Assembly (NCBI GenBank): GCA_002269645.1
Contig: NIVC01000343.1
Coordinates: 39,755 to 103,754 of the forward strand
Direction of reading: 5' to 3'
DNA from: Macrostomum lignano
Lineage: Eukaryota
DNA: 64,000 bases
A program made the translations under genes and the position numbers. The notes beneath the pieces were generated by a model, which saw nothing but the letters and a program-made list of their open reading frames with translations, had not been told where the DNA came from and did not search any database. This document shows, in pieces, positions 4,111 to 58,579 of the stretch. Positions within the stretch are counted from its first letter, which is position 1. Each line of letters opens with the position of its first letter.

Positions 4111-4338
4111 TTCTTTTAATCCTTCTTTAATCCTACTAGCTTCAATCCGACAATCAAGTTCTAATTCCTTAAAGAATCCTCTTTAATCCCCAAATGGGTT
4201 CTCATCCCTAATTTCCCTTAGAATCCTGTATCTAATTTCCTTGTAATGTGACAGAACACGGCCTTCTATCTAATAATATCGGCTAAATAATATCGCTATT
4301 AAGCTACAGCAGGCAGAGAATATCGTTTCTAACTGCAG

Positions 4339-4605
4339 GTGACCCTACGCCTAGTAACAGCCGAGCCCGAGCTGAAACAGATCGATCGCATGTTCGTCCG
4401 CTTATCAACCCTGGCAACTGTCACCCACGTGAAAAAGTACATAGCAATGCAAGTATTCGAAGATGCCAGCCGATTTAAAGAGATTGACATCACCTGCGAC
4501 AATCAGTTGCTAGGGAAGGATCATTCGCTGAAATTTGTTATAATCACTAGGTCGTCTCGGCCGCAGCCATTGACGTTGCATTATTGCATGAAGTTGCAGT
4601 TCTGA
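4339..4605 (+). CDS. PCGF3: Last coding exon of a Polycomb group RING finger protein (PCGF3/5-like), RAWUL domain
   Basis: Acceptor ctaactgcAG at 4337-4338. Translation ...LSTLATVTHVKKYIA...EIDITCDNQLLGKDHSLKFV...PLTLHY closely resembles the recalled PCGF3/5 C-terminus (ATVLHLKKFIA...LGKDHTLKFV...LLLHY). Stop at 4603-4605; AATAAA at 5825 and 6031. Upstream exons lie outside the window. Confidence 0.82.
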   Translation: MTLRLVTAEPELKQIDRMFVRLSTLATVTHVKKYIAMQVFEDASRFKEIDITCDNQLLGKDHSLKFVIITRSSRPQPLTLHYCMKLQF

Positions 4606-15700: not shown

Positions 15701-17547
15701 CAGATTGTGTCTATGGTTGTGGAGTCACACAATTGCAGATTGTGTCTATGGTTGGGGAGTCAGCCAATGGCAGATTGTGTCTATGGTTGTGGAGTCAGCC
15801 AATGGCAGATTGTGTCTATGGTTGGGGAGTCAGCCAATGGCAGATTGTGTCTATGGTTGGGGAGTCAACCAATGGCAGATTGTGTCTATGGTTGTGGAGT
15901 CAGCCAATGGCATATTGTGTCTATGGCTGTGGAGTCAGCCAATGGCAGATTGTGTCTATGGTTATGGAGTCACACAATTGCAGATTGTGTCTATGGTTGG
16001 GGAGTCAGCCAATGGCAGATTGTGTCTATGGTTGTGGAGTCAGCCAATGGCATATTGTGTCTATGGCTGTGGAGTCAGCCAATGGCAGATTGTGTCTATG
16101 GTTGTGGAGTCACACAATTGCAGATTGTGTCTATGGTTGGGGAGTCAGCCAATGGCAGATTGTGTCTATGGTTGGGGAGTCAGACCCCACACAGTTACCA
16201 TGTTCATATATTTCTACTGCAAGTAGTATTGAACATTGACGCTAAAAAAGGATTAAATTATCAATCCAATTTGCGCAAATTTATTCAAGAGTATTCGCGC
16301 AAGCACGAGGACGGCATAGTAAGCGAGTCGCTGGTGTACTTTACCGAACGTCTGACCCACGGCGGCGACGCCAGACGGTCGGACCAGCCGCCTGAGCTCA
16401 AGCTGAGACGGGTTGTTGACTTGGTATGTACTGCAATTTGCCGCACAAACATAACGTTAAAGTACAGGAGTTCACAACTAGATTTTTCACAAATTAGCCG
16501 CTTCGAAAACAAGACATTTCACAAACTAGACACTTCACAAACTAGCCACTTCACAAACGAGATATTTCACAAACTAGTCACTTCACAAACTAGACACTTC
16601 ACAAACTAGACACTTCACAAACTAGACACTTCACAAACTAGACACTTCACAAACTAGACATTTCACAAACTGGACATTTCACAAACTAGTCACTTCACAA
16701 ACTAGTCACTTCACAAACTAGTCACTTCACAAACTAGTCACTTCACAAACTAGACACTTCACAAACTATTCACAAACTAGACATTTCACAAACTATTCAC
16801 AAACTAGACATTTCACAAACAAGACACTTCACAAACTAGACACTTCACAAACTAGACACTTCACAAACTAGACACTTCACAAACTAGTCACTTCACAAAC
16901 TAGACACTTCACAAACTAGACACTTCACAAACTAGACACTTCACAAACTAGACATTTCACAAACTGGACATTTCACAAACTAGTCACTTCACAAACTAGT
17001 CACTTCACAAACTAGTCACTTCACAAACTAGCCACTTCACAAACGAGATATTTCACAAACTAGTCACTTCACAAACTAGACACTTCACAAACTATTCACA
17101 AACTAGACATTTCACAAACTATTCACAAACTAGACATTTCACAAACAAGACACTTCACAAACTAGACACTTCACAAACTAGACACTTCACAAACTAGTCA
17201 CTTCACAAACTAGACACTTCACAAACTAGACACTTCACAAACTAGACACTTCACAAACTAGACACTTCAGAAACTAGACACTTCACAAACTAGCCACTTC
17301 ACAAACTCGAGTGTTAACTGACTCAATAAAAGTGAATAATTTCAATGCAAACCGCTTCCAGTCGCCAATCACAGTGACAGACCAGACTCCAATGGAAGTT
17401 GTCCTGGAGATGTTTCGAAAGCTGGGCCTCAGACAGACTCTGGTGACGCACAATGGCCGTCTATTGGGTATTATCACGCGAAAAGATGTGCTGCGGCATA
17501 TTGAATATCTGCACAATATTGATCCGCACAATTTACTCTTTAACTGA
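7636..17547 (+). CDS. CLCN3: CLC-family H+/Cl- exchange transporter, ClC-3/4/5-like. Predicted exons 7636-7825, 8213-8338, 9093-9326, 9413-9561, 10002-10985, 13656-14241, 16290-16423, 17362-17547 (862 aa)
   Basis: All junctions are GT-AG and phase-consistent (2589 nt). Motifs: [20 protein letters not shown] (gating Glu), [10 protein letters not shown] (proton Glu), GLFIP, two CBS domains, C-terminus DPHNLLFN. The first two exons are less certain. The symbol denotes the CLCN3/4/5 clade. Confidence 0.93.
8410..8960. repeat. 29-bp intronic minisatellite (CTTCAGCTGTCTGCAGCCTCCTTCCGGAC)
   Basis: Period 29; lies in CLC intron 2; produces ORFs 8297..9007 and 8400..8972. Confidence 0.95.
9585..9910. 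repeat. (TCTG)n degenerate microsatellite
   Basis: Seen directly, in the CLC intron after exon 9413-9561. Confidence 0.95.
11040..11420. repeat. Degenerate 10-bp TTAGGTCNNT array
   Basis: TTAGGTCGCT/TTAGGTCTAT/TTAGGTTGCT units just after donor 10986. Confidence 0.85.
12060..13530. repeat. 32-bp minisatellite (CTAGAACTGAGACTAGATAGAGTAGAGAGTGA) with a duplicated variant block
   Basis: Period 32 (12063, 12095...). A variant cassette recurs at ~12580, ~13240 and, degenerately, ~13475. Confidence 0.95.
14290..16190. repeat. 35-bp minisatellite (AATGGCAGATTGTGTCTATGGTTGTGGAGTCAGCC)
   Basis: Period 35; fills CLC intron 14242-16289; nearly stop-free on +, hence ORFs such as 14288..16609. Confidence 0.96.
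16500..17310. repeat. 16-bp minisatellite (ACTAGACACTTCACAA)
   Basis: Period 16 in the last CLC intron. Confidence 0.95.
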
Positions 17548-18698
17548 TCAATATCGTCGCGCTTTTCTTCTTATTGAGTAAGTGCCCCTGCTTTCAATTG
17601 AAAATTTGCTTCTTATGTAATCTTTTGTGTTAGAGTTTTATTTTTTCTTGTTGTACTATTATACTACTGAATTGCTGTAACAAATGGCTTATATGGTAGT
17701 AGTATATAAGGAATATATTTTACCGTATAAATTTATTGTTGTTTTTTCTTGCGAACCGTATTATTCCAAGGAGTCGTTAACGCTATTTTGTCTTCTTGTA
17801 TTGTGTCATTCGATGTTTGCTATTGTGGTGCAGTGCGCACGTTTCTTGGAAATGCATTACCGACATATGGCCGATTGATTTCTTATAAAATTGACATGAG
17901 TTTTTGTTCAATATAAGCTAGCTATAAGCATTGACAAGCTTTCAAAAAAATTCCAAGAAGCAAACTACTTGTATACGCGTAATTTTCTAAAATAATTTTA
18001 TCCGTTTGTTTTTGTTTTTGGAAGTGGCCAAACTACTTAATACAAAACATTCTGTAGTAATTGTAGTAGCTATATTGTATTAGTAATATTACTACTGCGC
18101 GCTAGGGACCAAAGATAAAGATATAGGCATAAAGATAGAGAATTAATACGGTTGTAAACTATTTGCTGTGTAATGGCGTTTAACTTTGCGTTTTTGTCTG
18201 TGTTTTCTGCAAATACATGTTTTTGAGAGTTGGCCTACTTACATAAGTAGTATGTTGAAACAGTAAAATTAAGATATTTAGCATTTTACAAGCCAAATCT
18301 AAGAAAGTCTGTTCTTGATTAATTTCTAAGAAAACATGGTTTAATTCCCAATGTACTCAACTAGTGTGGAGCTTACTGATATGATAGATTATGCATTCTG
18401 ATGATTCCATATTATATATTAATTTGTTTATGCGCTATTAGTGTGGAGTATTGATTTTTGTTAGCGATATTTTTTCGACTGGGAAAATAGACAGCTTTCA
18501 ATACTCGAGTGTCCATTTTAACAATAACAATGTTGCTGTTCTGAACTTTTAGCTTTCGCTTTTTAATTCTCTGCATTTGCTTCCTTTGTTATACTGGTGG
18601 GTTACGAGTTAAGCAGAGTTGGCCGCGGTTAGTATGAAGATACTAAATAGACTCTAGCTTTAGTTTAACGCCATGCTGTGATTGTACAGAATGTACAG

Positions 18699-18704
18699 AA
18701 TAAA
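18699..18704 (+). terminator. Candidate poly(A) signal of the CLC gene
   Basis: First AATAAA I can find after the CLC stop at 17547, ending an AT-rich 3'UTR-like region. Confidence 0.5.
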
Positions 18705-18970
18705 AGTACAAGCTGCACCCGGTTTAAGAGGGGAGTGATTTGTTCGGCCATAAGACCTAAATGTCACAAAGCATAAAACTTCTTAAGACCTAAATTTCAT
18801 AAGATCTTAATTTCATCAGACCTAAATTTCATAGCGCCTAAACTTCTCAAGACCTAATAGACCTAAATATTTTCGGCGATGCAAACTTTCGGGCTTGTGA
18901 TGACTGCGCCCTGTTTAAGAGAGCCTAGTAGCGGTAGTAACTAAGGAACCTCCCTGTTGCACGCCTTCAG

Positions 18971-21900
18971 CTCCGAATAGCCGCTTTGAACGCGGCGCCG
19001 CCGCAGGCGCCCACAAGCTCGGCGTCATCGGCATCTGGAGCTGTGCAGGCCAAGCAGCACCATCAGCATAGCAACAAGCAGCAGCACAGGCACCAGTCAA
19101 ACCATGCCTCATCGTCGGCTAATTCCTCCGCTATGGATGAATCTGCTGTCGCGTCGGGCACTCGCGAAACCGAGGAGGCGCTTGTGACGCGCAGTTTTCA
19201 GCGCGCGCTTGCGCGTCTAGCGCAAATTGGCGCCGGCTCCGGCAGCGACAGCGGCGGCCCCGCAGTTGAAGAGGCCATGCGCTCTCTCGAGGCCATCACT
19301 GCTAGCCGGATCTTCCTTGACGGTCCCGCGGCTGCTCACCTATCCGAGCACCTGCGCCAGATCCTCGCCAGCTGCCACCGTCAGCTCGGTCAGCATCACT
19401 GCTGGGCTAGGCGGTTCGACCTCGCCGTGCGCCATCTTTCAGCCGCTGTCGAGGCCGATCCGCGCGACATTGCGGCCGCCTTTCACCTGGCCTGGTCGGC
19501 CTACCTCAGCTGCGACCTGCGCTTGGCCGCCTCCGCATTGCGCGCCTGTTTGAAATTGAATCCCGACCATCTGCCGGCTCTGGATCTCAGCCTGTCTGTT
19601 GCTTATTGTATGGGCGAGCCAGAGACTTGGCTAGCCGCCTGCGGTCGGCTGCTGGACCGCCTGCCGAGCCACCGTCGGGCGGCCTTCTGCGTTGCCGAGT
19701 ATCTGCGCTGCGCACCGTCAGCTTCAAACTGCCTGCCAGCGGGCTCGGCCCTGGCCAAGCTGGCTGCAGCGATTCAGTTGAAAACTGTAGATGAGAGCGA
19801 GTGGGAGGCTGATAGGAAAGAGTTGATGGCTGTGCGAGCGGAGCATCAGGTGAATGTTTCATCTGTTTATTGGTTCGTCTGTAAGCGTCCAGCTACAGAC
19901 TCATTAGGCTCCAGCTACAGACTCATTAAGCTAATGCTACAGACTCATTAGGCTCCAGCTACAGACTCATTAGGCTCCAGCTACAGACTCATTAAGCTAA
20001 TGCTACAGACTCATTAGGCTCCAGCTACAGACTCATTAAGCTATTGCTACAGACTCATTAGGCTCCAGCTACAGACTCATTAAGCTAATGCTACAGACTC
20101 ATTAAGCTAATGCTACAGACTCATTAAGCTAATGCTACAGACTCATTAAGCTAATGCTACAGGCTCATTAAGCTAATGCTACAGACTCATTAAGCTATTG
20201 CTACAGACTCATTAGGCTCCAGCTACAGACTCATTAAGCTAATGCTACAGACTCATTAAGCTATTGCTACAGACTCATTAGGCTCCAGCTAGAGACTCAT
20301 TAAGCTAATGCTACAGACTCATTAAGCAATGCTACAGACTCATTAAGCTAATGCTACAGACTCATTAAGCTAATGCTACAGACTCATTAAGCTAATGCTA
20401 CAGACTCATTAAGCTATTGCTACAGACTCATTAGGCTCCAGCTACAGACTCATTAAGCTAATGCTACAGACTCATTAAGCTATTGCTACAGACTCATTAG
20501 GCTCCAGCTAGAGACTCATTAAGCTAATGCTACAGACTCATTAAGCAATGCTACAGACTCATTAAGCTAATGCTACAGACTCATTAAGCTAATGCTACAG
20601 ACTCATTAAGCTAATGCTACAGACTCATTAAGCTAATGCTACAGACTCATTAAGCTAATGCTGCCGATACTGCAGGCGCGAACAAATCCACAGTCTGCCG
20701 AAGCAGCTGCCGCGAAGCCGTCAGTGCCGGAACTCGTGCCAGTTAGCCCGACGGAAGCCTCCAATTGGACTGCAATGGCGGCTCTGCTCGAGCAACTGTG
20801 CGCGACTTCAACAGTTGACGATGCAGACAGCTGGGGCAGCTGCCGAGCCTACAGGCTGATCCGCCTGGTGCCCGCAGCGCTGGTTTCGGAGTCCGATGAT
20901 CAGCTGCCTGCTGTCCAGGATGATGAAGCTTCTGAGCCTCCTCCGCCACCTCCGCTGGCTACTCCCGCATCGTCCGCTGAGCTGACCTCGATGGCAAAGT
21001 CTTCAACGGCCAGTCTGGGCCAGGCCTTCCCGGCTGAGCTGCTGTGCAGTCGCCGGTCCAACCGCTTGGCTGCCGCCTCCGCCAATTCCGCTTCCGCTTC
21101 CGCTAGCGGCGGCGGCGACTCGACCGCTGAGGACTCCGACGACGATGACGACGAACTGGCAGCTGCCGCTGGCTCGTCTGACGCCGCCTCGGCTGCCGCG
21201 GCGGTTGCCGATCGACTTCGGCGACTGCTGGACGCCTCCGGCCGCTGCTGCTTGCCCAGCTGCGTTCGCCGACTGTCGGGCGTTTACTTTGCTAGACGCT
21301 ACTGCGCCGGCCGCAGCGGCGGCAGCTCCGACGATGACAACGACAATGACGGCGATTGTGAAGCTGATGCCGCCGCTTCCGCTGCATTGGCGGCTGTCCA
21401 GCTGTTGAGCCCGTTCCGGCTGGACGAGCTCCTTTCTCGACTGTCCGAGTCTGCCGAGCTGTACACCCCGCCGACGCCGCCGCCGTGTTCTGCGGCCTCC
21501 TCGCCGAACAGTTCGAACTCCGCTGGCCCGCTGAATTGCCCGCAGCTTTCCTCCGCCTAAGCGGGCCGCGCCTCGGCATTCTGGCCGACAATCCGAACGT
21601 GTCCGTCAGCGGGTTGCACTGCCTGCCAGCCGAGTCGCTCTGTCTGGTGGCCCTGGCTCACCTGGAGCTCCGATTGGACCGTCGCCGCGTCAAGGATGCC
21701 GCCAATTGGGTGAGCACTGATCTCAGCTGGCCAAATTTGGAGTCTCTGGCGCACTCGATCGCCTGCCTGCTGTTGCGCCTGGCGTCGCCGCCGGCTCGTC
21801 TGCTGCTGCGCCTGGCCTGGGCCCGGCTGCGGCTCTCCGCCGCGTGTCGGCGCGGACTGGACGATCAGGCGGCGTTCGGCTACCTGGCGGCCGGCCTGGA

Positions 21901-24900
21901 CTCGCCGCTGGTCTCGCCCAACTCGCCCGACTGGCCAGTTGTCAACTTGGCGGCTCTCCGTCGGCTGCGTCGGGCAGCCAAATCTGGTCGCGAGTTTGCG
22001 CTGGCCTCCGCTGCCGCTCGGTCGGGCAACTCGGCCGCCGTGGTGGCCGCTCTTCGACCGGCTTTGTACGCTCGCGAGCGCTGCAGCGATGCGGCTTCAA
22101 CTGCTGAAATCAGTGCTGAACGGGCCAGGTGTGACATCTTAGTTAATTAGCTATCTTATCCTGTCCCTGTAACACCTGAACAGTCTTGCCCGTAATAAAA
22201 CCCTTTGAAAAATCCCTAAAATCCCTAAATATTAAGCTGTAACACCCCCAAAATCACTCCTGTATGCCCCCTCCCCCAAAATCATCCTTGTAACACCCCA
22301 AAATCATCTCTGTAACCCTCAAAATCATCTCTGTAACACCCCAAAAATACTCTCTGTAACACCCGAAAAATCATCTCTGTAACCCCAAAACTATCCCTGT
22401 AACACCCCCAAAACTATGCCTGTAACACCTCTCAGAACTATCCCTGTAAACACCCCTCAAAGCCATCCCTGTAACACCCCTCAAAACCATCCCTGTAACA
22501 CCCTCAAAGCCATCCCTGTAACACCCCTCAAAACCATCCCTGTAACACCCTCAAAGCCATCCCTGTAACACCCTCAAAGCCATCCCTGTAACACCCTCAA
22601 AGCCATCCCTGTAACACTCCTCAAAACCATCCCTGTAACACCCTCAAAGCCATCCCTGTAACACCCTCAAAGCCATCCCTGTAACACCCTCAAAGCCATC
22701 CCTGTAACACCCCTCAAAGCCATCCCTGTAACACCCCTCAAAACCATCCCTGTAACACCCCTCAAAAGCATCCCTGTAACACCCCTCAAAGGTATCCCTG
22801 TAACACCCGATCCTTGGCAGGCAAATCTGCGAGATGTTCGTGAGCTCCTGTTACCGCCTCGGCGACCTCGCCCAGTGCTATTCGCACGGCGCCCGCCTGC
22901 TCCGGCTGCTGGCCGCAACCGACGAATCCCGCCCAGTTCGAGCATCAACCGTGGCATTCGCGTTTCGCAATCTGCTGGCCTGCCAGGAGCATCTGGGCGC
23001 CCGGCCAGCCGACTTGGCCGAGACTTGCGCTCAGCTGGCTGCGTGCGCCGATCTCATTGTCCGGTGCCTGCGCCATCGAGTGCCGCTCACAGATGCGGAA
23101 GCTTGGATTTACCTGCACCGGCACTTTGTGTTTTTGATTGAGGAAACTGAGAAGCAGATAAATGACAAGTCCATGGATACTGTACATGTATCTGCCCATT
23201 GCGTTATTGAAGCTGTGGCCGAGGCTGTGGAAGTTGATTCTGATGCAGCTGCTGAGAAGCCCGTGTTGGAAGCTGGAACTGGTCAAGCAGCGGGAGCTGG
23301 AACTGGTCAAGCAGCGGAAGCTGGAACTGGTCAAGCATCGGAAGCTGGAACTGGTCAAGCATCGGAAGCTGGAACTGGTCAAGCAGCGGAAGCTGGAACT
23401 GGTCAAGCATCGGAAGCTGGAACTGTCAACACATCGGAAGCTGGAACTGTCAACACATCGGAAGCTGGAACTGTCAACGCATCGGAAGCTGGAACTGTCA
23501 ACGCATCGGAAGCTGGAACTGTCAACACATCGGAAGCTGGAACTGTCAACGCATCGGAAGCTGGAACTGTCAACGCATCAGACGCTGGATCCGGTCAAAT
23601 GCAGGTCGCAGGCGAAGTTGATGAAGCTAGAATACGCGCGGAGCTGCGGCAGCGTCAGTCCAATCTGCTGGAATCTGCGGGCCGCCTGTTGATTCTGGCC
23701 CACCAGCTGATGCACGAGACGTCGGCGGCGGCGGCGGCGGCGGTGCCAAGTCAGCAGCCTGCCTGCAATGCCGGCTGTCAGCGAAGCGATGGCCGGCTAC
23801 TGCACTACACCGTGGCTAGTCTGGTGCCGCTGCTGCTGCGCCAACAGCCGCCACCGGACCACCCGGCCTACCTGGCCGTTGACCAGGCCTTCCACTGCCT
23901 CTACGGCCTGGGCAGGCGGGGCCGCTACTCCCGCCGCGGCCGGATCCGGGATCATCGATGCGGCGGACCGCCGGTTAGCATCGACTGGGAGACCGGACGA
24001 CACCTGATGCGCTACTATCTGCCGGACAAATTCCCCGAGTTCGATTCCACCAGGCTGGCCTCGCTGCCGGCCGATCTGGAGCGCTGCTTCGACTTGGCCG
24101 CCGCTGGCCTGCCCGACCGGCTGCGTGTTGACGCCAACGCTGTTAACGACTTCCTATTCGGCGGAGTGGACACTTTGCCTGAGTATAATCGGCCGTTGAC
24201 GCCGGATGAACGGTTGACTGCCGATATTCACTACCTGCTGGCCGACTGCTGCCTGAAATCCAACCGCTTCCTGCCGGCTATCAAGCACTATTTGAGGGAT
24301 CTGGCGCTGAGTCCCGACCGCTTCGACTCTTGGGCTGGTGAGTTGGCGGCGATTGCTCATAAACCAACCTGGGAATCGCTCATAAATCAAACCCAGGAAT
24401 CGCTCATAAATCAAACCCAGGAATCGCTCATAAAAAATTAAGAATCGCTCATAAACCAAACCCTGCAGGAATCGCTCATAAACCAAACCCAGGAATCGCT
24501 CATAAACCAAACCCAGGAATCGCTCATAAAACAATTAAGAATCGCTTATATATCAAACCCAGGAATCGCTCATAAAACAATTAAGAATCGCTCATAAACC
24601 AAACCCAGGAATCGCTCATAAACCAAACCCTGGAATCGCTCATAAACCAAACCCTGGAATCGCTCATAAACCAAACCCAGGAATCGCTCATAAAACAATT
24701 AAGAATCGCTCATAAACCAAACCCAGGAATCGCTCATAAACCAAACCCAGGAATCGCTCATAAACCAAACCCAAGAATCGCTCATAAACCAAACCCAGGA
24801 ATCGCTCATAAGCCAACACGCTAATAAACCTGAACATCATTCGAACAGCCAGCCCGTTAATCCTGAAAATAAACAATCGGGATAATACACTGCCCGTATA

Positions 24901-27900
24901 ACAAATCAAAGCACACCTCCCACCGCAGGCATGGCCCTGGCCCGGTGCAGCCGACTCCAACAGAAGCTGAACCTACAGGACGGAAGCAACAGCAGCACTG
25001 TTAGCCGCAAATATTCCCTAGCCTGTCTGCGCTCGTTCGATCAGGCTCTGCGCATTAATCCGCTGTGCCCGAAGCTGCTGACTGAGCGCGGACTATTCGC
25101 CTACGAGCTGCACTCGCACGCCAGCCAGCTGGGCCGGCGGGGCAAGCAGTTGGAGCTGGCCGCTGAGTGGCGTCTGCCTATGCTGCGGCTGGCTAGGGAG
25201 TCTTTTCTACAGGTAGGTTGCAGGTGACGCGCTTGAGATGGGAATCGGTTGTGAAGCCGATTGCAGAGTAAACGTGCTGGTTTTCAATTTTCATTTGAAT
25301 AGCCATTGGAACAGGGGTCTGAAAGATTCCGGCCGATCAAGGTTAGTCTTTCGCATCTCTCCTCTCCTCCCTCTCCTCTCCTCTCCCCCTCTCTCCTCTC
25401 CTCTCCTCTCCTCTCTCCCCTCTCCTCTCTCTCCTCTCCCCTCTCCTCTCCTCTCCTCTCCTCTCTCCCTCTCCTCTCTCCTCTCCTCTCCCCTCCTCTC
25501 CTCTCCTCTCCTCTCTCCTCTCTCCCCTCTCCTCTCTCCTCTCCTCTCCCTCTCCTCTCCCCTCTCTCCCCTCTCCTCTCTCCTCTCCTCTCCCCCTCTC
25601 TCCTCTCCTCTCCTCTCCTCTCTCCCCTCTCCTCTCTCCTCTCCTCTCCCCTCTTCTCTCTTCTCCTCTCCCCTCTCCTCTCTCCTCTCCTCTCCTCTCC
25701 TCTCCTCTCCCCTCTCCTCTCCTCTCCCTCTCCTCTCCTCTCCTCTCCCCTCTCCTCTCTCCTCTCCTCTCCTCTCTCCTCTCCTCTCCCTCTCCTCTCT
25801 TCTTTCCTCTCTCCTCTCCTCTCCCCTCTCTCCTCTCCTCTCCTCTCCTCTCCTCTCCTCTCCTCTCCTCTCCTCTCCTCTCCTATCTCCTCTCTCCTCT
25901 CCTCTCCTCTCTCCTCTCCTCTCCTCTTCCCTCTCCTCCCTCTCCCATCTCTCCTCTCTTCTTTCCTCTCCTCTCTCCTCTCCTCTCCCATCTCCTCTCT
26001 TGTCTCCTCTCTTCTTTCCTCTCCTCTCCTCTCTCCTCTCCTCTCCTCTTCCCTCTCCTCCCCTCTCCTCTCTCCTCCCTCTCCCATCTCTCCTCTCTTC
26101 TTTCCTCTCCTCTCCTCTCCCATCTCCTCTCTCTTGTCTCCTCTCTTCTTTCCTCTCCTCTCCCCTCTCCTCTCTTCTCTCCCCTCTCCTCTCCTCCTCT
26201 CCTCTCTTCTTTCCTCTCCTCTCCTCTCCTCACCTCTCCTCTCCTTGAGGTAAAAAGGCCCTGCATTAGAATATAGTTTTCTTTTTTGTATATCTGACTG
26301 GTAGCAAAAATATTATTTGGCATATATTGAGTAGTATGATCATTCATTTGTCTATTTGTCAAAACTACTGTTAGTAGTTCAATATCAAAATTTAAAATCT
26401 CAAATTTCTCAGGCGGCCTCTGCGGCCAACCATCCGGAGCTGCGCGATGCCGGGGAAGAATGCGAGAACTGGCTGTACAACTACATGCTGGGCAAGTGCT
26501 GCGAGAAGTCGGCCGATCATCCCGATATCTGCCTTGGTTACTACGCCGCCGCGGCTAACGAGCTGCGACAGAGCGGCGCCCGCTATCCCAAACGAATCAG
26601 CACCTCCTACGGTAGCACTCCCCGGCTGGCTGTGGAAGCCCTGGAGATGCAGTACAGACAGCTGGCCATTGTCTGCAAACAGCTGCTCATGTTTCTGCCT
26701 AGGCCGAAATCTGCTGTCAGTTCACCGACTACAGCGTCTGTCAATCTTAGCTGGATTGAAGCGCGATTGATTGAACTGTCCAAGTCTGCCTTTCAACGTC
26801 GCGACGCTCTTGGCGGCGGCGGCGGCGGCGGCGGCGGCGAAGGATCGAAGCGTCGACATGCCGGCGGCGGCGGCAGCGGCAGAACCAGGCGAGTTGATTG
26901 TGTTGAAGATCACGAGGGTGGTGGCAGAGTAGCTCCGGCCAACCTCCCCAAGGCAGAGAGAGTGTACAGCCCCGACGACAGGTATTCATATATATGCAAC
27001 CGACAGCTCAGCCGCAGCTATTGCGCGGCGCATCTGAAGGCTGCGTACGGCTGTTCAGTCCAAGGACTGGGGGGTCGCCACACACACCCTCAATCACCCC
27101 AGCTAATGCTGGCACCCATTTTACAGCTGGGTGAGCTGAAGCAATGCAGAGTTCAGTGTCTTGCTCATAAGGACACAGATTGTTCCGAATTGGATCAGGA
27201 ATCGAACCCCCGACCTATCAGTCGTGAGTCCGACGCTCTGACCACTAGGCTACAACCCCCTATGTATATATATATATTTGATTATATTTATGATTCCCGC
27301 AGAGCCAGCAAGCGGGCCAGGATCGAAGACAGCGGCTGCAGCGCGGCCGAGGACTCCAGTGCCCACCATGGCGGCGTCTCGGCCAAATCGCAGCTAGCGG
27401 AGGTCGACAGTCGAGCCGAGGTTCGCCAACTGCTCAACGACCAGCTAGACGTGGTGTCCGCTGTGCACTCGCTCGTGTCCGGCGCCGCTGGAATCTGCGG
27501 CGAATCCGCGCCTCGTCCGGACGAGCTTCTGGCCAGGAGATTGGCTCGCTGCGTTGCTATGGCAACCGAACAGTTGGCCGACCTGCTGGCGAGACTGCCG
27601 CATCACTACAAAGCTGCCTGCCTGCTGGCCCGGCTTCGGCTTCGAGTTGGGAAGCGGCGGGAGGCCCGCGACCTCCTGCTGGGGCCCGGCGACCCAGGAG
27701 TAGGCTGGCAGCGGCTGGCTCATATGCCCTGTCCGGGACTGTTCCAGGTGTGCGGGCTTGGTGTGCAGTTAGTGTGCTCAGGATTAGAGGTTTGAGTTTG
27801 GGGATTTTCAGTTCGAGTTGGGGATTTTGAGTTTGGGGATTTTGAGTTCGAGTTGGGGTTTTGAGTTCGAGTTGGATTTTGAGTTCGAGTTGGGGATTTT

Positions 27901-28898
27901 GAGTTCGAGTTGGGGATTTTGAGTTCGAGTTGGGATTTTGAGTTCGAGTTGGGGATTTTGAGTTCGAGTTTGGGGATTTTGAGTTCGAGTTGGGGATTTT
28001 GAGTTCGAGTTGGGATTTTGAGTTCGAGTTGGGGATTTTGAGTTCGAATTGGGGGTTTTGAGTTCGAGTTGGGGATTTTGAGTTCGAGTTAGGATTTTGA
28101 GTTCGAGTTGGGATTTTGAGTTCGAGTTGGGGATTTTGAGTTCGAGTTGGGGGTTTCGAGTTCGATTTGAGGGGGGGGTTGAGTTCGAGTTGGGGATTTG
28201 AGTTTGTGTTAAGGGGTTTGAGTTCAATTTGAGGATTTTGAGTTCGAGTTCCGTCGGTTTTGAATTATGATTTGAGATTAGATTAGTTACGATTATGAGT
28301 TGAGATTAGATTTGCGATTTAAACTGGGATTTTGAGCTCGAATTACGACTGCAAATTTGAGATTGGGTTCTTAGAAGGACTCGGAATCAAAGTATTATTC
28401 CTCAGTTTAATTCCCCAACCCCCCTCCCCCCAGGACCGCCGCCCGGCCAATCTGTTCAACGGCGTCTGGCGTCTGCCAAGCGACGACATCGACAGGTCCG
28501 GCTGCTTCGCCGCCCACATGCGCCGCGCCCTCGAGCTGGCCATCGAGGCGGCCGATTGGCACCGCCTGCTGCCGCTGCATACCTGCCTGCGCAGCACCGA
28601 GAACCGCGGCTGCCTTGTTGACGACGACCTGCGCTGGCTGACCGACCGCAGCTTGGCGGCCATGGCCGACCTGCTGGCAGATGAGCGCTCGCCTCCGACT
28701 GTCAGCCGGGCCCAGCTGCTTCAGCTGATGAAGTGTCGGAAGCTGGCCTCGGCCGCTGCTGCTGGCGGCGGCGGCGTTGTCTACGATCGACTGCTGGCGG
28801 CCGCCTTCGCTAGGTGCGGCGCTGCCGTGGTCCGTCCGGACAGGCCGCTTCTGGACCAGGCGCTGGAGTTCTGCGAGAGCGGCGGCGGTAGCCTTTGA
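18971..28898 (+). CDS. CABIN1: Calcineurin-binding protein cabin-1 orthologue (HIRA complex TPR subunit). Predicted exons 18971-19849, 20676-22128 (1-nt frameshift near 21460), 22821-24337, 24929-25212, 26413-26981, 27303-27747, 28434-28898 (~1870 aa); initiator ATG not found
   Basis: Matches to recalled CABIN1 motifs: RIAALNA (N-terminus), NPDHLPALD, FELRWP, QAFHCLYG, LPDKFPEFDS, IHYLLAD, PDRFDSWA|GMALAR, WLYNYMLGKCCEK, ARYPKRI, LAVEALE, NLFNGVWRLPSDDIDRSGCFAAHM. Junctions are GT-AG and phase-consistent; the summed length is one base short of a multiple of 3. Confidence 0.9.
19888..20660. repeat. 22-bp minisatellite (GCTACAGACTCATTAAGCTAAT / ...TAGGCTCCA)
   Basis: Period 22; fills CABIN1 intron 19850-20675. 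Confidence 0.96.
22200..22810. repeat. 23-24-bp minisatellite (CATCCCTGTAACACCCCTCAAAGC)
   Basis: CABIN1 intron 22129-22820; degenerate at the 5' end, regular at the 3' end. Confidence 0.93.
23269..23604 (+). repeat. In-frame 24-bp coding repeat in CABIN1 (six EAGTGQA(A/S)-type units, seven EAGTVN(T/A)S units)
   Basis: 13 units plus one degenerate unit inside ORF 22834..24441. Confidence 0.9.
24350..24810. repeat. 24-bp minisatellite (AATCGCTCATAAACCAAACCCAGG)
   Basis: CABIN1 intron 24338-24928. Confidence 0.94.
25355..26245. repeat. ~0.9-kb almost pure C/T tract ((CTCCT)n/(CT)n)
   Basis: CABIN1 intron 25213-26412; source of the L/S/P-rich and E/R/G-rich ORFs. Confidence 0.97.
26997..27260 (-). 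mobile_element. tRNA-derived CORE-like SINE, copy 1
   Basis: Minus strand reads an A box (TAGCCTAGTGG), a B box (GGTTCGATTCC), a MIR-CORE-like segment and a GC-rich hairpin tail. Homologous to 39640-39888 and 56447-56685. Confidence 0.85.
27790..28260. repeat. 19-20-bp minisatellite (GAGTTCGAGTTGGGGATTTT)
   Basis: CABIN1 intron 27748-28433. Confidence 0.94.
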
Positions 28899-28914: not shown

Positions 28915-29560
28915 TGTTTGAGCATAGGGATTCTTGTTGGAGCAAAGGGATTCTTGTTGGAGCATAGGGATTCTTGTTGGAGCATAGGGATTCTTGTTGG
29001 AGCATAGGGATTCTTGTTGGAGCATAGGGATTCTTGTTGGAGCATAGGGATTCTTGTTGGAGCATAGGGATTCTTGTTGGAGCATAGGGATTCTTGTTGG
29101 AGCATAGGGATTCTTGTTGGAGCATAGGGATTCTTGTTGGAGCATAGGGATTACAGTTTGAGCATAGGGATTACAGTTTGAGCATAGGCATTACAGTTTG
29201 AGCATATGGATTACAGTTTGAGCATAGGGATTACAGTTTGAGCATAGGCATTACAGTTTGAGCATAGGCATTACAGTTTGAGCATAGGCATTACAGTTTG
29301 AGCATAGGCATTACAGTTTGAGCATAGGCATTACAGTTTGAGCATAGGCATTACAGTTTGAGCATAGGCATTACAGTTTGAGCATAGGCATTACAGTTTG
29401 AGCATAGGCATTACAGTTTGAGCATAGGCATTACAGTTTGAGCATAGGCATTACAGTTTGAGCATAGGCATTACAGTTTGAGCATAGGCATTACAGTTTG
29501 AGCATATACATTACAGTTTGAGCATAGGCATTGCAGTTTGAGCATATTGGGATTATTGTT
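28915..29560. repeat. 20-bp minisatellite in two blocks (GAGCATAGGGATTCTTGTTG, then GAGCATAGGCATTACAGTTT)
   Basis: Period 20 with an abrupt unit switch at ~29150; immediately 3' of the CABIN1 stop. Confidence 0.96.
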
Positions 29561-39639: not shown

Positions 39640-39888
39640 AACCGACAGCTCAGCCGCAGCTATTGCGCGGCGCATCTGAAGGCTGCGTACGGCTGATCAA
39701 TTCAAAGACTGAGGGGTCGCCACACACAGCCTCAATTACCCCAGCTAATGCTGGCACCCATTTTACAGCTGGGTGAACTGAAGCAATGCAGAGTCAAGTG
39801 TCTTGCTCAAGGACACAAATTGTCCCGACTGGGTCGGGAATCGAACCCCCGGCCTTTCAGTCATGAGTCCGACGCTCTAACCACTAGG
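39640..39888 (-). mobile_element. tRNA-derived CORE-like SINE, copy 2 (in the receptor 3'UTR region)
   Basis: Minus strand: CCTAGTGGTTAGAGCGTCGGACTCATGACTGAAAGGCCGGGGGTTCGATTCCC...GTGTCCTTGAGCAAGACACTTGAC...CAGCTGTAAAATGGG; ~53-bp tail identical to copy 1. Confidence 0.87.
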
Positions 39889-56300: not shown

Positions 56301-58579
56301 ATAGTGGTCATTAATCATTTTGTCCAGAAAAACACCGTCTCAGCTGGATTGTTCGACGCGTGTTTTAATAATTACTTTACTTTATTAAATTTACAGTTTT
56401 TTGTTTCATAAAAATGCATTAGTTGTTCTATCATTGATTTGAAGACTTGTAGCTTAGTTGTCAGAGCGTCGGGATTCACGACTGAAAGGTCGGGGGTTCG
56501 CTTCCCAATCCCACTCGGAACAATTTGTGTCCTTAAGCAAGACACTTAACTCTGCATTGATTCAGTTCAACCAGTTGTAAAATTGGTGCCAGCATTAGCT
56601 GGGGTAATTGAGGGTCCTTGAACTGAACAGCCGTACGCAGCTTCAGATGCGCCGCGCAATAGCTGCGGCTGAGCTGTCGGTTGCAGGTGTAACCACTCTG
56701 AAAACCCAAAAGACCATCAGGCGCAGGGTCTCACCTTCATAGGTCGCATAATATCTTCAACCAACAGTCGCAGAGTTTCAACATAGGTCCGCTCAGTGGT
56801 CACCAGCTCTTCCATACAGATCTCCTTAGCTGATCGTTTGGCGCCAGCATCCTCAGCATTGCCGCTGACTAGAGTCTTGTTCATGATGGTCTCGTAGACT
56901 CGCTCAGCCGCGGCGTCAACATAATTGCTGCCAACAGGCTGATCGGCGGCCGTGGGGACAGCCAGATGCTGCCGCTGCTGGCTTTTCTTAGCGGTGGCCG
57001 TGGCCATCAGGTTGCAATAATCCGAGGATAAGTCCGTCACAGCGGCGGCGTCATTGCCGTTGCTACTAGTAGCAACCGTGAAGCCTTCAATGCCGCTCTG
57101 CTTAGCTCTGGGACTGTTAGACAGCAGCGACAGGGTGCGAATGATTCTGCCAACGTTCTCTTGGCTGAGCAGGTCGTCAGGTGAGAACAAGTCAGCTGGG
57201 GACAGGCCGAACTCTGTCTGACAAGCCGATAGGAACAGGTTGAGGTTCCGGCGGAAGGCGAATTGAGAATTCAGCGTGGCCAGCTTGAAGCCGGGCAGCT
57301 GCTCCGGGGTCACCTGCGGGGGAGTGGGATTTGGGATACTTGGGATAGGTACAGGTCCAGGTAAGGGATTCCAGGTATGGGATTCTAGGTATGGGATTCA
57401 AAGTATTGGATTCCAGGTACAGGATTTTAAGTATGGGATTCTAGGTATGGGACGTTAGGGAATGGGATTCCAGGTATGGGATTCTAGGTATGGGACGTTA
57501 GGGAATGGGATTCCAGGTATGGGATTCAAAGTATTGGATTCCAGGTACAGGATTTTAAGTATGGGATTCTAGGTATGGGACGTTAGGGAATGGGATTCCA
57601 GGTATGGGATTCTAGGTATGGGACGTTAGGGAATGGGATTCCAGGTATGGGATTCTAGGTATGGGACGTTAGGGAATGGGATTCCAGGTATGGGATTTTA
57701 GATATGGGATTCCAGGAAATGGAATTCTAAGTATGGGATTCCAGGAAATGGGATTCTAGATATGGGATTTCAGGGAATGGGATTCCAGGTATTGGATTCT
57801 AGGCATGGGATTCCAGGGAATGGAATTCTAAGTATGGGATTCCAGGAAATGGGATTCTAGATATGGGATTTCAGGGAATGGGATTCCAGGTATTGGATTC
57901 TAGGCATGGGATTCCAGGGAATGGAATTCTAAGTATGGGATTCCAGGAAATGGGATTCTAGATATGGGATTTCAGGGAATGGGATTCCAGGTATTGGATT
58001 CTAGGTATGGGATTCCAGGGAATGGAATTCTAAGTATGGGATTCCAGGAAATGGGATTCCAGATATGGGATTTCAGGGAATGGGATTCCAGGTATTGGAT
58101 TCTAGGTATGAGATTCCAGGGAATGGAATTCTAGGTATGGGATTCCAGGGAATGGAATTTTGAGAATGGGATTTTAAGTATGGGATTCAGGTACGGGCCG
58201 CTGCTGCGAGGATTAGAATGAGATAATTAGGATAATGAAGCCTGCTTATTAATAAAATTAAAAGCCACTGCACTTCTATTAATTTAGATTTAAAGGTTAA
58301 TTTTATAACTAAATTATCGCCCACCTGCTGGGAGCTGATCGCAGGCAGAATATGACACAGCAGCACACCGTCGGTCAGGCAGTTCAGCAGGTCAACCACC
58401 GTGGCACCTGGCGTATCAACCAGCACGGACTGAGCTTGGGCGAGTATATCCGGGCAGGAGGCCAGACAGCGGAGCAACCAGTCGGCGCACATTCGCCATT
58501 CGGCATCGGCGCCGCCGAACTTGTCAACGGCTGGCATCATGGCTGCGGACTGGGGCTGGCTGGGCAGCTCTGCAATCAT
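43565..58579 (-). CDS. VAV: Vav family Rho/Rac GEF (CH-acidic-DH-PH-C1-SH2-SH3). Exons 58579-58325, 57313-56735, 53826-53492, 52230-52062, 47138-46427, 45276-44796, 43874-43565 (946 aa)
   Basis: CH (EWRMCADWL, LTDGVLLCHIL, FAFRRNLNLFL), three acidic-region Tyr (DYCNL, NYVD, VYETI), DH (EELVTTERTYV; LAVPMQRVLR|YHLL; ATYVNETKRD), PH, C1, SH2 (GTYLVRES, VKHMRV), one C-terminal SH3 (VGLFP). All junctions GT-AG, total 2841 nt. Confidence 0.95.
44026..44730. repeat. 30-bp minisatellite (GAGATGCCTGGAGTCCCCGTTCCCTAATTA)
   Basis: Vav intron 6. Confidence 0.95.
45440..46200. repeat. 30-bp minisatellite (GAGATGCCTGGAATCCCTGTTACCCGATGA), same family as 44026-44730
   Basis: Vav intron 5; nearly perfect units from 45630. 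Confidence 0.95.
47289..47869. mobile_element. Candidate MITE (581 bp) with 29-bp imperfect terminal inverted repeats and an internal 108-bp tandem duplication
   Basis: Left end CATGGACTTCTCTAGCTAGCATCTGGACT; right end reverse complement CATGGACTTCTCCAGTTAGCATCTGGACT (27/29). Duplication starts at 47627 and 47735. No clear TSD. Confidence 0.65.
48330..48690. repeat. Degenerate 16-18-bp repeat (TGACACTGCGCGCTTA)
   Basis: Vav intron 4. Confidence 0.85.
49060..50440. repeat. (GACT)n microsatellite with a recurring interrupting cassette
   Basis: Vav intron 4; cassette TTAC(TGAC)4TTGAGTGATTGGGT recurs eight times. Confidence 0.97.
50930..52020. repeat. 15-bp minisatellite (GACATTGTGGGCATA) with periodic 13-bp variants
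   Basis: Vav intron 4, adjacent to donor 52061. Confidence 0.96.
52620..53260. repeat. 13-bp repeat (GGTCCTTCAGAAT / GGTCCTTTGGGAT)
   Basis: Vav intron 3. Confidence 0.92.
53880..54520. repeat. ~15-bp repeat (GGGATTCCAGGTAT family)
   Basis: Vav intron 2; same family as 57330-58190. Confidence 0.9.
55130..55910. repeat. 36-bp minisatellite (GGGCAGATTCCAGCTGGGAGCATTGGCCAGTTTGTG)
   Basis: Period 36 with 35-bp variants; Vav intron 2. Confidence 0.95.
56447..56685 (+). mobile_element. tRNA-derived CORE-like SINE, copy 3 (small internal deletion)
   Basis: TTGTAGCTTAGTTGTCAGAGCGTCGG...GGGGTTCG...GTGTCCTTAAGCAAGACACTTAAC...; the reverse complement of copies 1 and 2; ends ~50 bp from the Vav exon 2 donor. 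Confidence 0.85.
57330..58190. repeat. ~15-bp repeat (GGGATTCCAGGTAT/GGGATTCTAGGTAT family)
   Basis: Fills Vav intron 1. Confidence 0.92.

What the first reader, a model, noticed from the sequence alone, without database searches (positions are those of the whole stretch)
18940..19000. CABIN1 has no ATG of its own: the initiator may be donated by the spliced leader
Seen: a good acceptor (...cctccctgttgcacgccttcAG, 18969-18970) is followed directly by CTC CGA ATA GCC GCT TTG AAC GCG = LRIAALNA. This matches residues 2-9 of vertebrate CABIN1 (MIRIAALNA, from memory). The first in-frame ATG (19133) would skip this conserved motif. I find no ATG|GT between the first AATAAA after CLC (18699) and the acceptor. 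Established: flatworm spliced leaders end in a conserved AUG that can act as the initiator Met (shown in schistosomes). Inference: SL trans-splicing at 18971 supplies Met1 exactly in frame, making translation dependent on trans-splicing.
Basis: partly seen in the sequence, partly recalled or inferred. Interest (0 to 1): 0.8.

Follow-up and report, generated by a model that had tools for sequence, protein, structure and literature searches.

The report
Spliced leader supplies CABIN1's start codon
In the flatworm Macrostomum lignano the CABIN1 gene starts at a splice acceptor exactly where its start codon should be, so the ATG at the end of the trans-spliced leader most likely supplies the first methionine; this mechanism is already known in flatworms, and CABIN1 is a new example of it.

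Summary
AG at 18969-70 is followed by CTC CGA ATA GCC GCT TTG AAC GCG (LRIAALNA). There is an in-frame stop at 18938, and the first in-frame ATG is codon 55 (19133).

The window is Macrostomum lignano, 100% identical to GenBank scaffold NIVC01000343.1. The gene is CABIN1 (E=1e-41 to Bemisia cabin-1). CABIN1 proteins from vertebrates, a crinoid, a mite, a beetle and marine metagenomes all begin M-[ILF]-[RKH]-I-x-A-L-N, so only Met1 is missing here.

The published M. lignano spliced leader ends ...TTGCATG|GTAAG. The acceptor CTTCAG fits the published trans-splice motif [T/C]TNCAG. About 30% of genes in this species are trans-spliced.

Two paralogous copies keep the same junction. Three independent gene models are 5'-partial and begin 3-21 nt after the acceptor, with no upstream exon.

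After the leader AUG, the next AUG (19104) is out of frame.

No read joining the leader to this exon could be retrieved, so trans-splicing at this site is inferred, not shown.

This is a new example of a known mechanism (Cheng et al. 2006).

Caveat: this copy has a 1-nt deletion in a C-run (21466-69) that breaks exon 2.

The parts
17311..17547 (+). Last coding stretch of the upstream CLC-type chloride channel gene (CBS domain), with stop TGA at 17545-47
   Evidence: ORF; sequence. The annotated 820-aa Voltage_CLC/CBS gene ends here in L006, and at the matching place in L001 and L002.
18699..18704 (+). Only AATAAA between the CLC stop and the CABIN1 acceptor. It is the presumed CLC poly(A) signal and lies 271 nt before the acceptor.
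   Evidence: The poly(A) function is inferred.
18749..18857 (+). 16/32-nt tandem repeat (AAGACCTAAATTTCAT...) in the intergenic stretch (outron). It is expanded in paralogue L001.
18879..18940 (+). Outron features that rule out an unspliced N-terminal extension: out-of-frame ATGs at 18879 and 18900, and an in-frame TAA at 18938-40
18950..18970 (+). Pyrimidine-rich tract and 3' splice acceptor. CTTCAG at 18965-70 fits the M. lignano trans-splice acceptor motif [T/C]TNCAG.
   Evidence: motif from PMC8629364. Conserved in L001, L002 and L006.
18971..18994 (+). Codons for LRIAALNA, which are residues 2-9 of the conserved CABIN1 N-terminus. The position of Met1 is occupied by the acceptor's CAG.
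18971..19849 (+). CABIN1 exon 1 (293 codons; donor CAG|GTGAAT)
   Evidence: GC content, GC3 and codon usage behave as coding sequence from 18971 onward.
19104..19106 (+). First AUG downstream of the acceptor. It is out of frame, has a good context (caaaccATGc) and opens a 27-codon ORF that overlaps the next in-frame AUG.
19133..19135 (+). First in-frame genomic ATG (codon 55; context tccgctATGg). It is a possible alternative start that would drop the conserved motif.
20676..22128 (+). CABIN1 exon 2
21466..21469 (+). C4 run where paralogue L002 has C5. This 1-nt deletion shifts the frame and leads to a stop at 21558-60 in this copy.
   Evidence: The same C4 is in GenBank NIVC01000343.1, where this copy is annotated only from 22834 (P0152, 1017 aa).
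22821..24337 (+). CABIN1 exon 3. It contains an in-frame 24-nt repeat at 23268-23589.
24929..25212 (+). CABIN1 exon 4
26413..26888 (+). CABIN1 exon 5 (apparent GC donor, CAG|GCGAGT)
27303..27747 (+). CABIN1 exon 6
28434..28898 (+). CABIN1 exon 7, ending in the stop codon

Best explanation
[quoted passage not shown] Its CABIN1 gene has no genomic start codon. The first coding exon begins at a 3' splice acceptor (CTTCAG|CTC, 18970|18971), and the acceptor sits where the ancestral ATG would be.

I propose that the 35-nt spliced leader (...CAATTTATTGCATG) is trans-spliced onto this acceptor. The mature mRNA would then read ...UUGC-AUG-CUC-CGA-AUA-GCC..., with a 32-nt 5' UTR. The leader's terminal AUG would be the first AUG on the message and would restore the conserved N-terminus M-LRIAALNA.

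CABIN1 lies 271 nt downstream of the only poly(A) signal of a same-strand CLC channel gene. It is therefore probably the downstream gene of a two-gene operon, or at least has a short outron.

Shown here: the sequence anatomy, the species, the gene identity, the conservation of the N-terminal motif, the fit to the acceptor motif, and the 5'-partial gene models.

Inferred: trans-splicing at this particular site, use of the leader AUG by ribosomes, and the operon.
For: - **Species.** P0001, P0151 and P0152 are M. lignano GenBank proteins. The window is 100% identical over 22,167 nt to NIVC01000343.1.
- **Gene.** P0151 matches Bemisia cabin-1 with three collinear matches, the best at E=1e-41.
- **N-terminus.** Cabin-1 proteins begin MIRIAALNA (vertebrates), MIHIAALND (crinoid), MIRIKALNE (mite), MLKIRALNR (beetle), and MLRICALNE, MLKICALNE and MFKICALNE (marine metagenomes). 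In L003 the ATG is contiguous in genomic DNA with CTG AGA ATC TGT GCG CTC AAC. Only the Met is missing in M. lignano.
- **Leader.** The M. lignano leader is CGGTCTCTTACTGCGAAGACTCAATTTATTGCATG with a GTAAG donor. The trans-splice acceptor motif is [T/C]TNCAG. About 30% of genes are trans-spliced, and 45% of genes conserved with human are (PMC8629364; PMC5173321).
- **Known use of the leader AUG.** It is established as an initiator in flatworms (Cheng 2006, as cited in PMC9851317 and PMC12582326; E. granulosus, PMC3510090). It is assumed to be the start codon in Macrostomum (PMC10468722).
- **Gene models.** The Mlig_3_7 pipeline trimmed leaders before ORF calling (PMC5730564). This would explain why the CDSs in L002 and L001 are 'partial' and start 15 and 21 nt after the acceptor, and why the independent model P0002 starts 3 nt after it. 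None has an upstream exon.
- **AUG order.** With the leader attached, the leader AUG comes first, the next AUG (19104) is out of frame in a good context, and the in-frame 19133 comes after it.
- **Coding signal.** It starts at 18971: GC rises from 44% to 62%, only frame 0 is open, and GC3 is 0.70.
- **No consensus donor upstream.** No ATG-initiated, phase-0 upstream exon has a GT[AG]AG donor.
- **Operon geometry.** Poly(A) signal to acceptor is 271 nt, of which 109 nt are tandem repeat. This is within the species' 1-kb operon criterion.
Against: - No read, EST or cDNA with the leader joined to this exon could be retrieved. The protein collection holds no M-LRIAALNA product, and the supplements of three M. 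lignano papers do not list the gene.
- The leader AUG has a weak context (U at -3, C at +4). The AUG at 19133 has G at -3 and G at +4. Leaky scanning could therefore also give a shorter protein.
- An ATG|GTAGTA (17693) is present in all three copies and cannot be excluded from sequence alone.
- The annotated CDS starts are 15-21 nt downstream of the acceptor, not exactly at it.
- In this copy a frameshift at 21466-69 would truncate the product, unless it is an assembly error.
Confidence: 0.78

Rival explanations
1. Translation starts at the genomic in-frame AUG at 19133 (codon 55). Under this reading the LRIAALNA stretch and the following low-complexity segment are 5' UTR, or a relic of the old N-terminus, whether or not the mRNA is trans-spliced.
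For: 19133 has the better context, tccgctATGg. The 45 residues after the motif are a low-complexity insertion that is absent from other cabin-1 proteins. The leader AUG context is weak.
Against: The motif is intact (7 of 8 residues identical to vertebrates), in frame and placed exactly at the exon start. Frame 0 is the only open frame, and its GC3 and codon usage look like coding sequence. An out-of-frame AUG in a good context (19104), with an ORF that overlaps 19133, precedes it. All three annotation efforts extended the ORF up to the transcript's 5' end.
Confidence: 0.1
2. A cis-spliced upstream exon supplies the ATG. The candidate is ATG|GTAGTA at 17693-95 inside the CLC 3' region. The window-specific ATG|GTTTAA at 18336-38 is a weaker candidate.
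For: ATG|GTAGTA is present in the window, in L002 (8708) and in L001 (8147). Flatworm acceptors are often shared between cis- and trans-splicing (PMC12582326).
Against: Neither donor fits the species' GT[G/A]AG consensus. 18336 is absent from L001 and L002. 17693 lies about 150 nt after the CLC stop, inside that gene's presumed 3' UTR, so a promoter would have to sit there. The RNA-seq-guided models in three copies contain no such exon.
Confidence: 0.05
3. Translation starts at a non-AUG codon on an unspliced transcript or on the trans-spliced mRNA, for example at ATA (18977) or AGG (18944).
For: Near-cognate codons lie in frame close to the motif.
Against: ATA and AGG are among the weakest near-cognate starts (general knowledge). 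Out-of-frame ATGs at 18879 and 18900 precede them on an unspliced RNA. A cognate AUG is supplied by a leader that is known to be used on about 30% of the genes.
Confidence: 0.02
4. This copy is a decaying duplicate, and its lack of a start codon has no functional meaning.
For: There is a frameshift at 21466-69 and a stop at 21558-60. GenBank annotates only a 1017-aa 3' ORF for this copy. M. lignano DV1 carries many recent duplicates.
Against: The two copies with intact reading frames (L001, L002) have the identical start-less junction. The missing ATG is therefore a property of the gene and not of this copy. A C5-to-C4 difference is a typical long-read homopolymer error.
Confidence: 0.25

Closest known systems
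Schistosoma mansoni trans-spliced mRNAs that use the leader's 3'-terminal AUG as initiator Met (Cheng, Cohen, Ndegwa & Davis, J Biol Chem 2006)
   Same: The flatworm leader ends in AUG. The acceptor is placed so that this AUG is in frame and restores a conserved N-terminus. No genomic ATG is available. According to PMC9851317, 28% of S. mansoni trans-spliced transcripts are in frame with the leader AUG, and more than 40 cDNAs need it.
   Different: The lineage is different: free-living Macrostomorpha, not a trematode. The gene is different (CABIN1). Here neither the junction nor the translation has been observed directly.
Echinococcus granulosus leader-bearing cDNAs predicted to be full-length only with the leader ATG (PMC3510090)
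   Same: The logic is the same: the conserved N-terminus requires the leader AUG.
   Different: Those cases rest on sequenced leader-bearing cDNAs. This one rests on genome sequence plus 5'-partial annotations.
slORFs: ORFs created by spliced-leader addition in nematodes, Oikopleura and trypanosomes (slORFfinder, PMC9851317)
   Same: The leader sequence supplies the start codon to the recipient mRNA.
   Different: Most of those slORFs use NUG codons inside the leader and give new or alternative ORFs. Here a cognate AUG at the leader's very end rebuilds the canonical protein.
M. lignano operons resolved by leader trans-splicing (Ustyantsev & Berezikov 2021, PMC8629364)
   Same: Two adjacent genes lie on the same strand. 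The repeat-adjusted distance is well under 1 kb. The downstream gene starts at a [T/C]TNCAG acceptor. The gene pair is kept in all three copies.
   Different: Neither a polycistronic precursor nor leader reads were seen here. Whether the upstream CLC gene is itself trans-spliced is unknown.

Membership tests
Flatworm mRNAs initiated at the spliced leader's 3'-terminal AUG | The organism has a spliced-leader RNA whose leader exon ends in AUG directly before the GU donor | tested here: met
   The species is identified as M. lignano. The published leader is ...TTTATTGCATG with a GTAAG donor (PMC8629364; PMC5173321). No leader RNA gene lies in the window itself.
Flatworm mRNAs initiated at the spliced leader's 3'-terminal AUG | [quoted passage not shown] | tested here: met
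   CTTCAG|CTC fits [T/C]TNCAG. No upstream phase-0 ATG exon has a consensus donor. The gene models have no upstream exon. A weak ATG|GTAGTA at 17693 remains formally possible.
Flatworm mRNAs initiated at the spliced leader's 3'-terminal AUG | The leader AUG is in frame with the main ORF and is required to complete a conserved N-terminus | tested here: met
   Leader plus exon 1 gives MLRIAALNA.... Orthologues begin M-[ILF]-[RKH]-I-x-A-L-N. There is an in-frame stop at 18938, and the next in-frame ATG is codon 55.
Flatworm mRNAs initiated at the spliced leader's 3'-terminal AUG | Leader-bearing reads or cDNA at this acceptor | not testable with these tools
   No RNA-seq reads are accessible. Exact-product look-ups and cluster listings gave no M-LRIAALNA product.
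Flatworm mRNAs initiated at the spliced leader's 3'-terminal AUG | Translation shown to start at the leader AUG | not testable with these tools
   This needs ribosome profiling, N-terminal proteomics or a reporter assay.
CABIN1 / cabin-1 (subunit of the HIRA histone chaperone complex) | Collinear similarity to named cabin-1 proteins over the N-terminal TPR region, the central ...RFDSWAGMALAR... region and the C-terminal ...FNGVWR(I/L)P..(E/D)IDR.G.FA.HM... region | tested here: met
   P0151 against Bemisia tabaci cabin-1 gives E=1e-41, 1e-17 and 8e-13, in order along the protein. Pfam finds only TPR repeats. No solved CABIN1 structure matched.
CABIN1 / cabin-1 (subunit of the HIRA histone chaperone complex) | An extreme N-terminal motif, M-[ILF]-[RKH]-I-x-A-L-N | tested here: met
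   LRIAALN at 18971-18991. Only the Met is not encoded in the genome.
M. lignano operon (polycistron resolved by leader trans-splicing) | Adjacent same-strand genes with a repeat-adjusted distance under 1 kb | tested here: met
   From the CLC stop (17547) to the acceptor (18970) is 1.4 kb. From the poly(A) signal (18699) to the acceptor is 271 nt, of which 109 nt are tandem repeat. The poly(A) site itself is inferred.
M. lignano operon (polycistron resolved by leader trans-splicing) | The downstream gene is trans-spliced, and a precursor RNA spans both genes | not testable with these tools
   No transcript data are available here.

The most novel reading that the evidence does not exclude
The ancestral CABIN1 start codon was replaced by a trans-splice acceptor. 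Production of the full-length protein, a subunit of the HIRA histone chaperone complex, would then strictly require spliced-leader addition. If the same start-less junction is found in other Macrostomum species and in other flatworm classes, it would be an old dependence on the leader AUG shared across the phylum. That could help date when the leader AUG took on its role as an initiator.
Probability: 0.3. Interest if true: 0.45.

Novelty: new member of a known kind. Interest (0 to 1): 0.3.

Why it matters
It corrects an annotation. The three M. lignano CABIN1 copies are deposited as 'hypothetical protein, partial', or as a 1017-aa fragment. The most likely reason is that the start codon is not in the genome but on the spliced leader.

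It is also a clean test case for leader-dependent initiation in the one flatworm with stable transgenesis. The junction is precise, the N-terminus is deeply conserved, and the next AUG is out of frame.

It does not reveal a new mechanism.

Tried and rejected
- Two word-seeded protein searches, with exon 1 and with the conserved central region, returned nothing. All hits of the third search were under 400 aa, so these negatives were not informative.
- The PDB search found only designed TPR proteins and OGT. Pfam found only TPR repeats.
- Rfam found nothing in the window. There is no leader RNA gene and no match to a known flatworm leader tail in the window. No tRNA genes were found.
- Exact-product look-ups gave nothing. 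I tried the window ORFs, P0002, and a hypothetical product of M plus exon 1 with a retained intron.
- The gene is not mentioned in the supplements of the MBE 2025 flatworm trans-splicing paper, Grudniewska 2018, Wudarski 2017 or Grudniewska 2016, nor in a full-text search for the gene ids.
- In one search I first found no ATG|GT in L001. One search shows ATG|GTAGTA at L001:8147, so that candidate is present in all copies.
- I rejected the idea that the missing ATG is specific to a decaying copy, because the intact paralogues share the junction.
Full report
**Observation.**
- The tract cctccctgttgcacgccttcAG ends at 18970. CTC CGA ATA GCC GCT TTG AAC GCG (LRIAALNA) follows at 18971-18994.
- Upstream in frame there is a TAA at 18938-40 and no ATG. 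The first in-frame ATG is 19133 (codon 55).
- The only AATAAA after the upstream gene's stop (TGA 17545-47) is at 18699. No ATG|GT lies between it and the acceptor.
- The pattern [ILFMV][RKH]I.ALN occurs once in the six-frame translation of the window, exactly at 18971. The expected count is 0.047.

**Source and gene.**
- A full HMMER scan with exon 1 (18971-19849) found a 100%-identical protein, P0001. The cluster listing names it and its relatives as Macrostomum lignano GenBank and UniProt entries.
- The window is 100% identical over 22,167 nt to NIVC01000343.1 of assembly GCA_002269645.1 (L006).
- Two paralogous copies were retrieved: L001, on the same scaffold in inverted orientation, and L002, on NIVC01000202.1. 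In all three copies an 820-aa CLC/CBS channel gene lies upstream on the same strand.
- The gene is CABIN1. P0151 aligns with Bemisia tabaci cabin-1 in three collinear blocks (E=1e-41, 1e-17, 8e-13).
- Pfam sees only TPR repeats, and the PDB holds no informative relative.
- The gene model in the window has seven exons: 18971-19849, 20676-22128, 22821-24337, 24929-25212, 26413-26888, 27303-27747 and 28434-28898.

**The N-terminus.** A profile search returned cabin-1 N-termini from many animals:

| Source | N-terminus |
|---|---|
| Mammal-like P0159, Anguilla, Ameca | MIRIAALNA |
| Crinoid Antedon | MIHIAALND |
| Mite Panonychus | MIRIKALNE |
| Beetle Rhamnusium | MLKIRALNR |
| Unnamed sequencing-run assemblies (P0175, P0207) | MIKISALNK, MIKIKALNE |
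| Marine metagenome contigs | MLRICALNE, MLKICALNE, MFKICALNE |

- In contig L003 the ATG is contiguous in genomic DNA with CTG AGA ATC TGT GCG CTC AAC.
- The Met therefore directly precedes the motif everywhere. M. lignano encodes residues 2-9 and puts CAG, which carries the acceptor's AG, where ATG should be.

**The leader.**
- Published work gives the M. lignano spliced leader as CGGTCTCTTACTGCGAAGACTCAATTTATTGCATG, followed by a GTAAG donor.
- The motif enriched at trans-splice acceptors is [T/C]TNCAG.
- About 30% of genes are trans-spliced, and 45% of the genes conserved with human are.
- Operons have a modal spacing of about 100 bp and are defined with a 1-kb threshold (PMC8629364; leader confirmed in PMC5173321).
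- The window's CTTCAG|CTC fits the acceptor motif.
- All reported flatworm leaders end in ATG (PMC12582326).
- Cheng et al. 2006 showed that this AUG serves as the initiator. More than 40 S. mansoni cDNAs require it (as summarised in PMC9851317). The same holds for E. granulosus cDNAs (PMC3510090).
- The Macrostomum genome paper explicitly treats the leader's final ATG as the translation start codon (PMC10468722).

**Indirect transcript evidence.**
- The Mlig_3_7 annotation trimmed leaders from reads and transcripts, cut transcripts at the trans-splice signals, and then called ORFs (PMC5730564). A gene that depends on the leader AUG must come out of such a pipeline as 5'-partial.
- That is what is seen. 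PAA88095.1 starts LNAAPPQ, 15 nt after the acceptor in L002. PAA85158.1 starts GAPPQ, 21 nt after the acceptor in L001. The independent UniProt model A0A1I8JR48 starts RIAALNA, 3 nt after it. None has an upstream exon.

**Translation logic.**
- With the leader attached, the leader AUG is the first AUG on the mRNA. Its context is tattgcATGc, which is weak.
- The next AUG (19104, caaaccATGc) is out of frame and opens a 27-codon ORF that overlaps the in-frame AUG at 19133 (tccgctATGg). The arrangement is identical in all three copies.
- From 18971 onward, GC rises from 44% to 62%. Only frame 0 is open. GC3 is 0.70, against 0.69 in the rest of exon 1. Codon usage fits frame 0 best.
- On an unspliced RNA, the out-of-frame ATGs at 18879 and 18900 and the in-frame stop at 18938 rule out an N-terminal extension.

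**Rivals.**
- *Cis-spliced ATG exon.* ATG|GTAGTA (17693) is present in all three copies. ATG|GTTTAA (18336) is present only in this one. Neither fits the GT[G/A]AG donor consensus. The first lies 150 nt after the CLC stop. No model contains either exon.
- *Initiation at 19133.* This cannot be excluded as a minor product of leaky scanning, but it would discard a motif kept across Metazoa.
- *Non-AUG initiation.* This is unlikely.

**Operon.** The poly(A) signal lies 271 nt before the acceptor, and 109 nt of that are a 16/32-nt tandem repeat. In L001 the repeat is expanded, giving 437-494 nt. This meets the published operon criterion, provided that CABIN1 is trans-spliced. The precursor RNA was not observed.

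**Caveat for this copy.** The window has C4 at 21466-69 where L002 has C5. This shifts the frame and gives a stop at 21558-60. It explains why GenBank annotates only a 1017-aa ORF from 22834 for this copy (P0152). It may be a homopolymer error of the long-read assembly or a real lesion in one duplicate. The start-less junction is shared with the intact copies either way.

**Verdict.** I put about 0.78 on the leader AUG being the CABIN1 initiator. No junction read was available. The mechanism is well known in flatworms, so this is a new member of a known kind. Its value is mainly as an annotation fix and as a clean test case.

Noticed in passing
window 21466-21469: The C4 homopolymer here is C5 in paralogue L002. 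It frameshifts CABIN1 exon 2 and gives a stop at 21558-60. The same base count is in GenBank NIVC01000343.1, where this copy is annotated only as a 1017-aa 3' ORF. It is either an assembly error or a decaying duplicate.
   Followed up: partly
window 19892-20662, 22283-22808, 24355-24816, 25356-26245, 27790-28250, 28916-29500: Almost every CABIN1 intron and the 3' flank carries its own long minisatellite, with periods of 22, 23/47, 24/118, 5-12 (CT-rich), 20/39 and 20 nt. Similar arrays fill much of the rest of the window.
   Followed up: partly
window 23268-23589: An in-frame 24-nt repeat in exon 3 encodes AGTGQASE/AGTVNASE units. The copy number differs between the window, P0001 and P0151.
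   Followed up: partly
window 26998-27249 (+), 39640-39888 (+), 56447-56685 (-): A dispersed element of about 255 nt occurs three times at 84-91% identity. One copy lies inside CABIN1 intron 5. Its reverse strand looks tRNA-derived, with box A and box B-like sequences, which suggests a SINE. ARAGORN calls no tRNA gene.
   Followed up: partly
L006 and L001 (NIVC01000343.1: 52,588-78,652 forward; 116,627-147,555 reversed), and L002 (NIVC01000202.1): The CLC-CABIN1 gene pair is present three times in the assembly. Two copies lie in inverted orientation on one scaffold. This fits the recent duplications known in the DV1 line.
   Followed up: partly
window 26886-26894: Intron 5 appears to use a GC donor (CAG|GCGAGT). 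This was inferred by fitting the window to the annotated protein P0151.
   Followed up: no
window 4333-4602 (+), ~35.8-39.5 kb (+), ~44.8-58.6 kb (-): Other genes were seen only as ORF fragments. They include a PCGF/BMI1-like C-terminal domain, a nicotinic-receptor-like subunit, and a Vav-like exchange factor with CH, DH and SH2 pieces on the minus strand. These identifications come from reading the ORFs and were not tested.
   Followed up: no
tool behaviour: The word-seeded protein search missed 100%-identical long proteins (1017-1795 aa) that the full HMMER scan found. In the one successful search it returned only proteins under 400 aa. Negative results from that tool for long proteins should not be trusted.
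   Followed up: no
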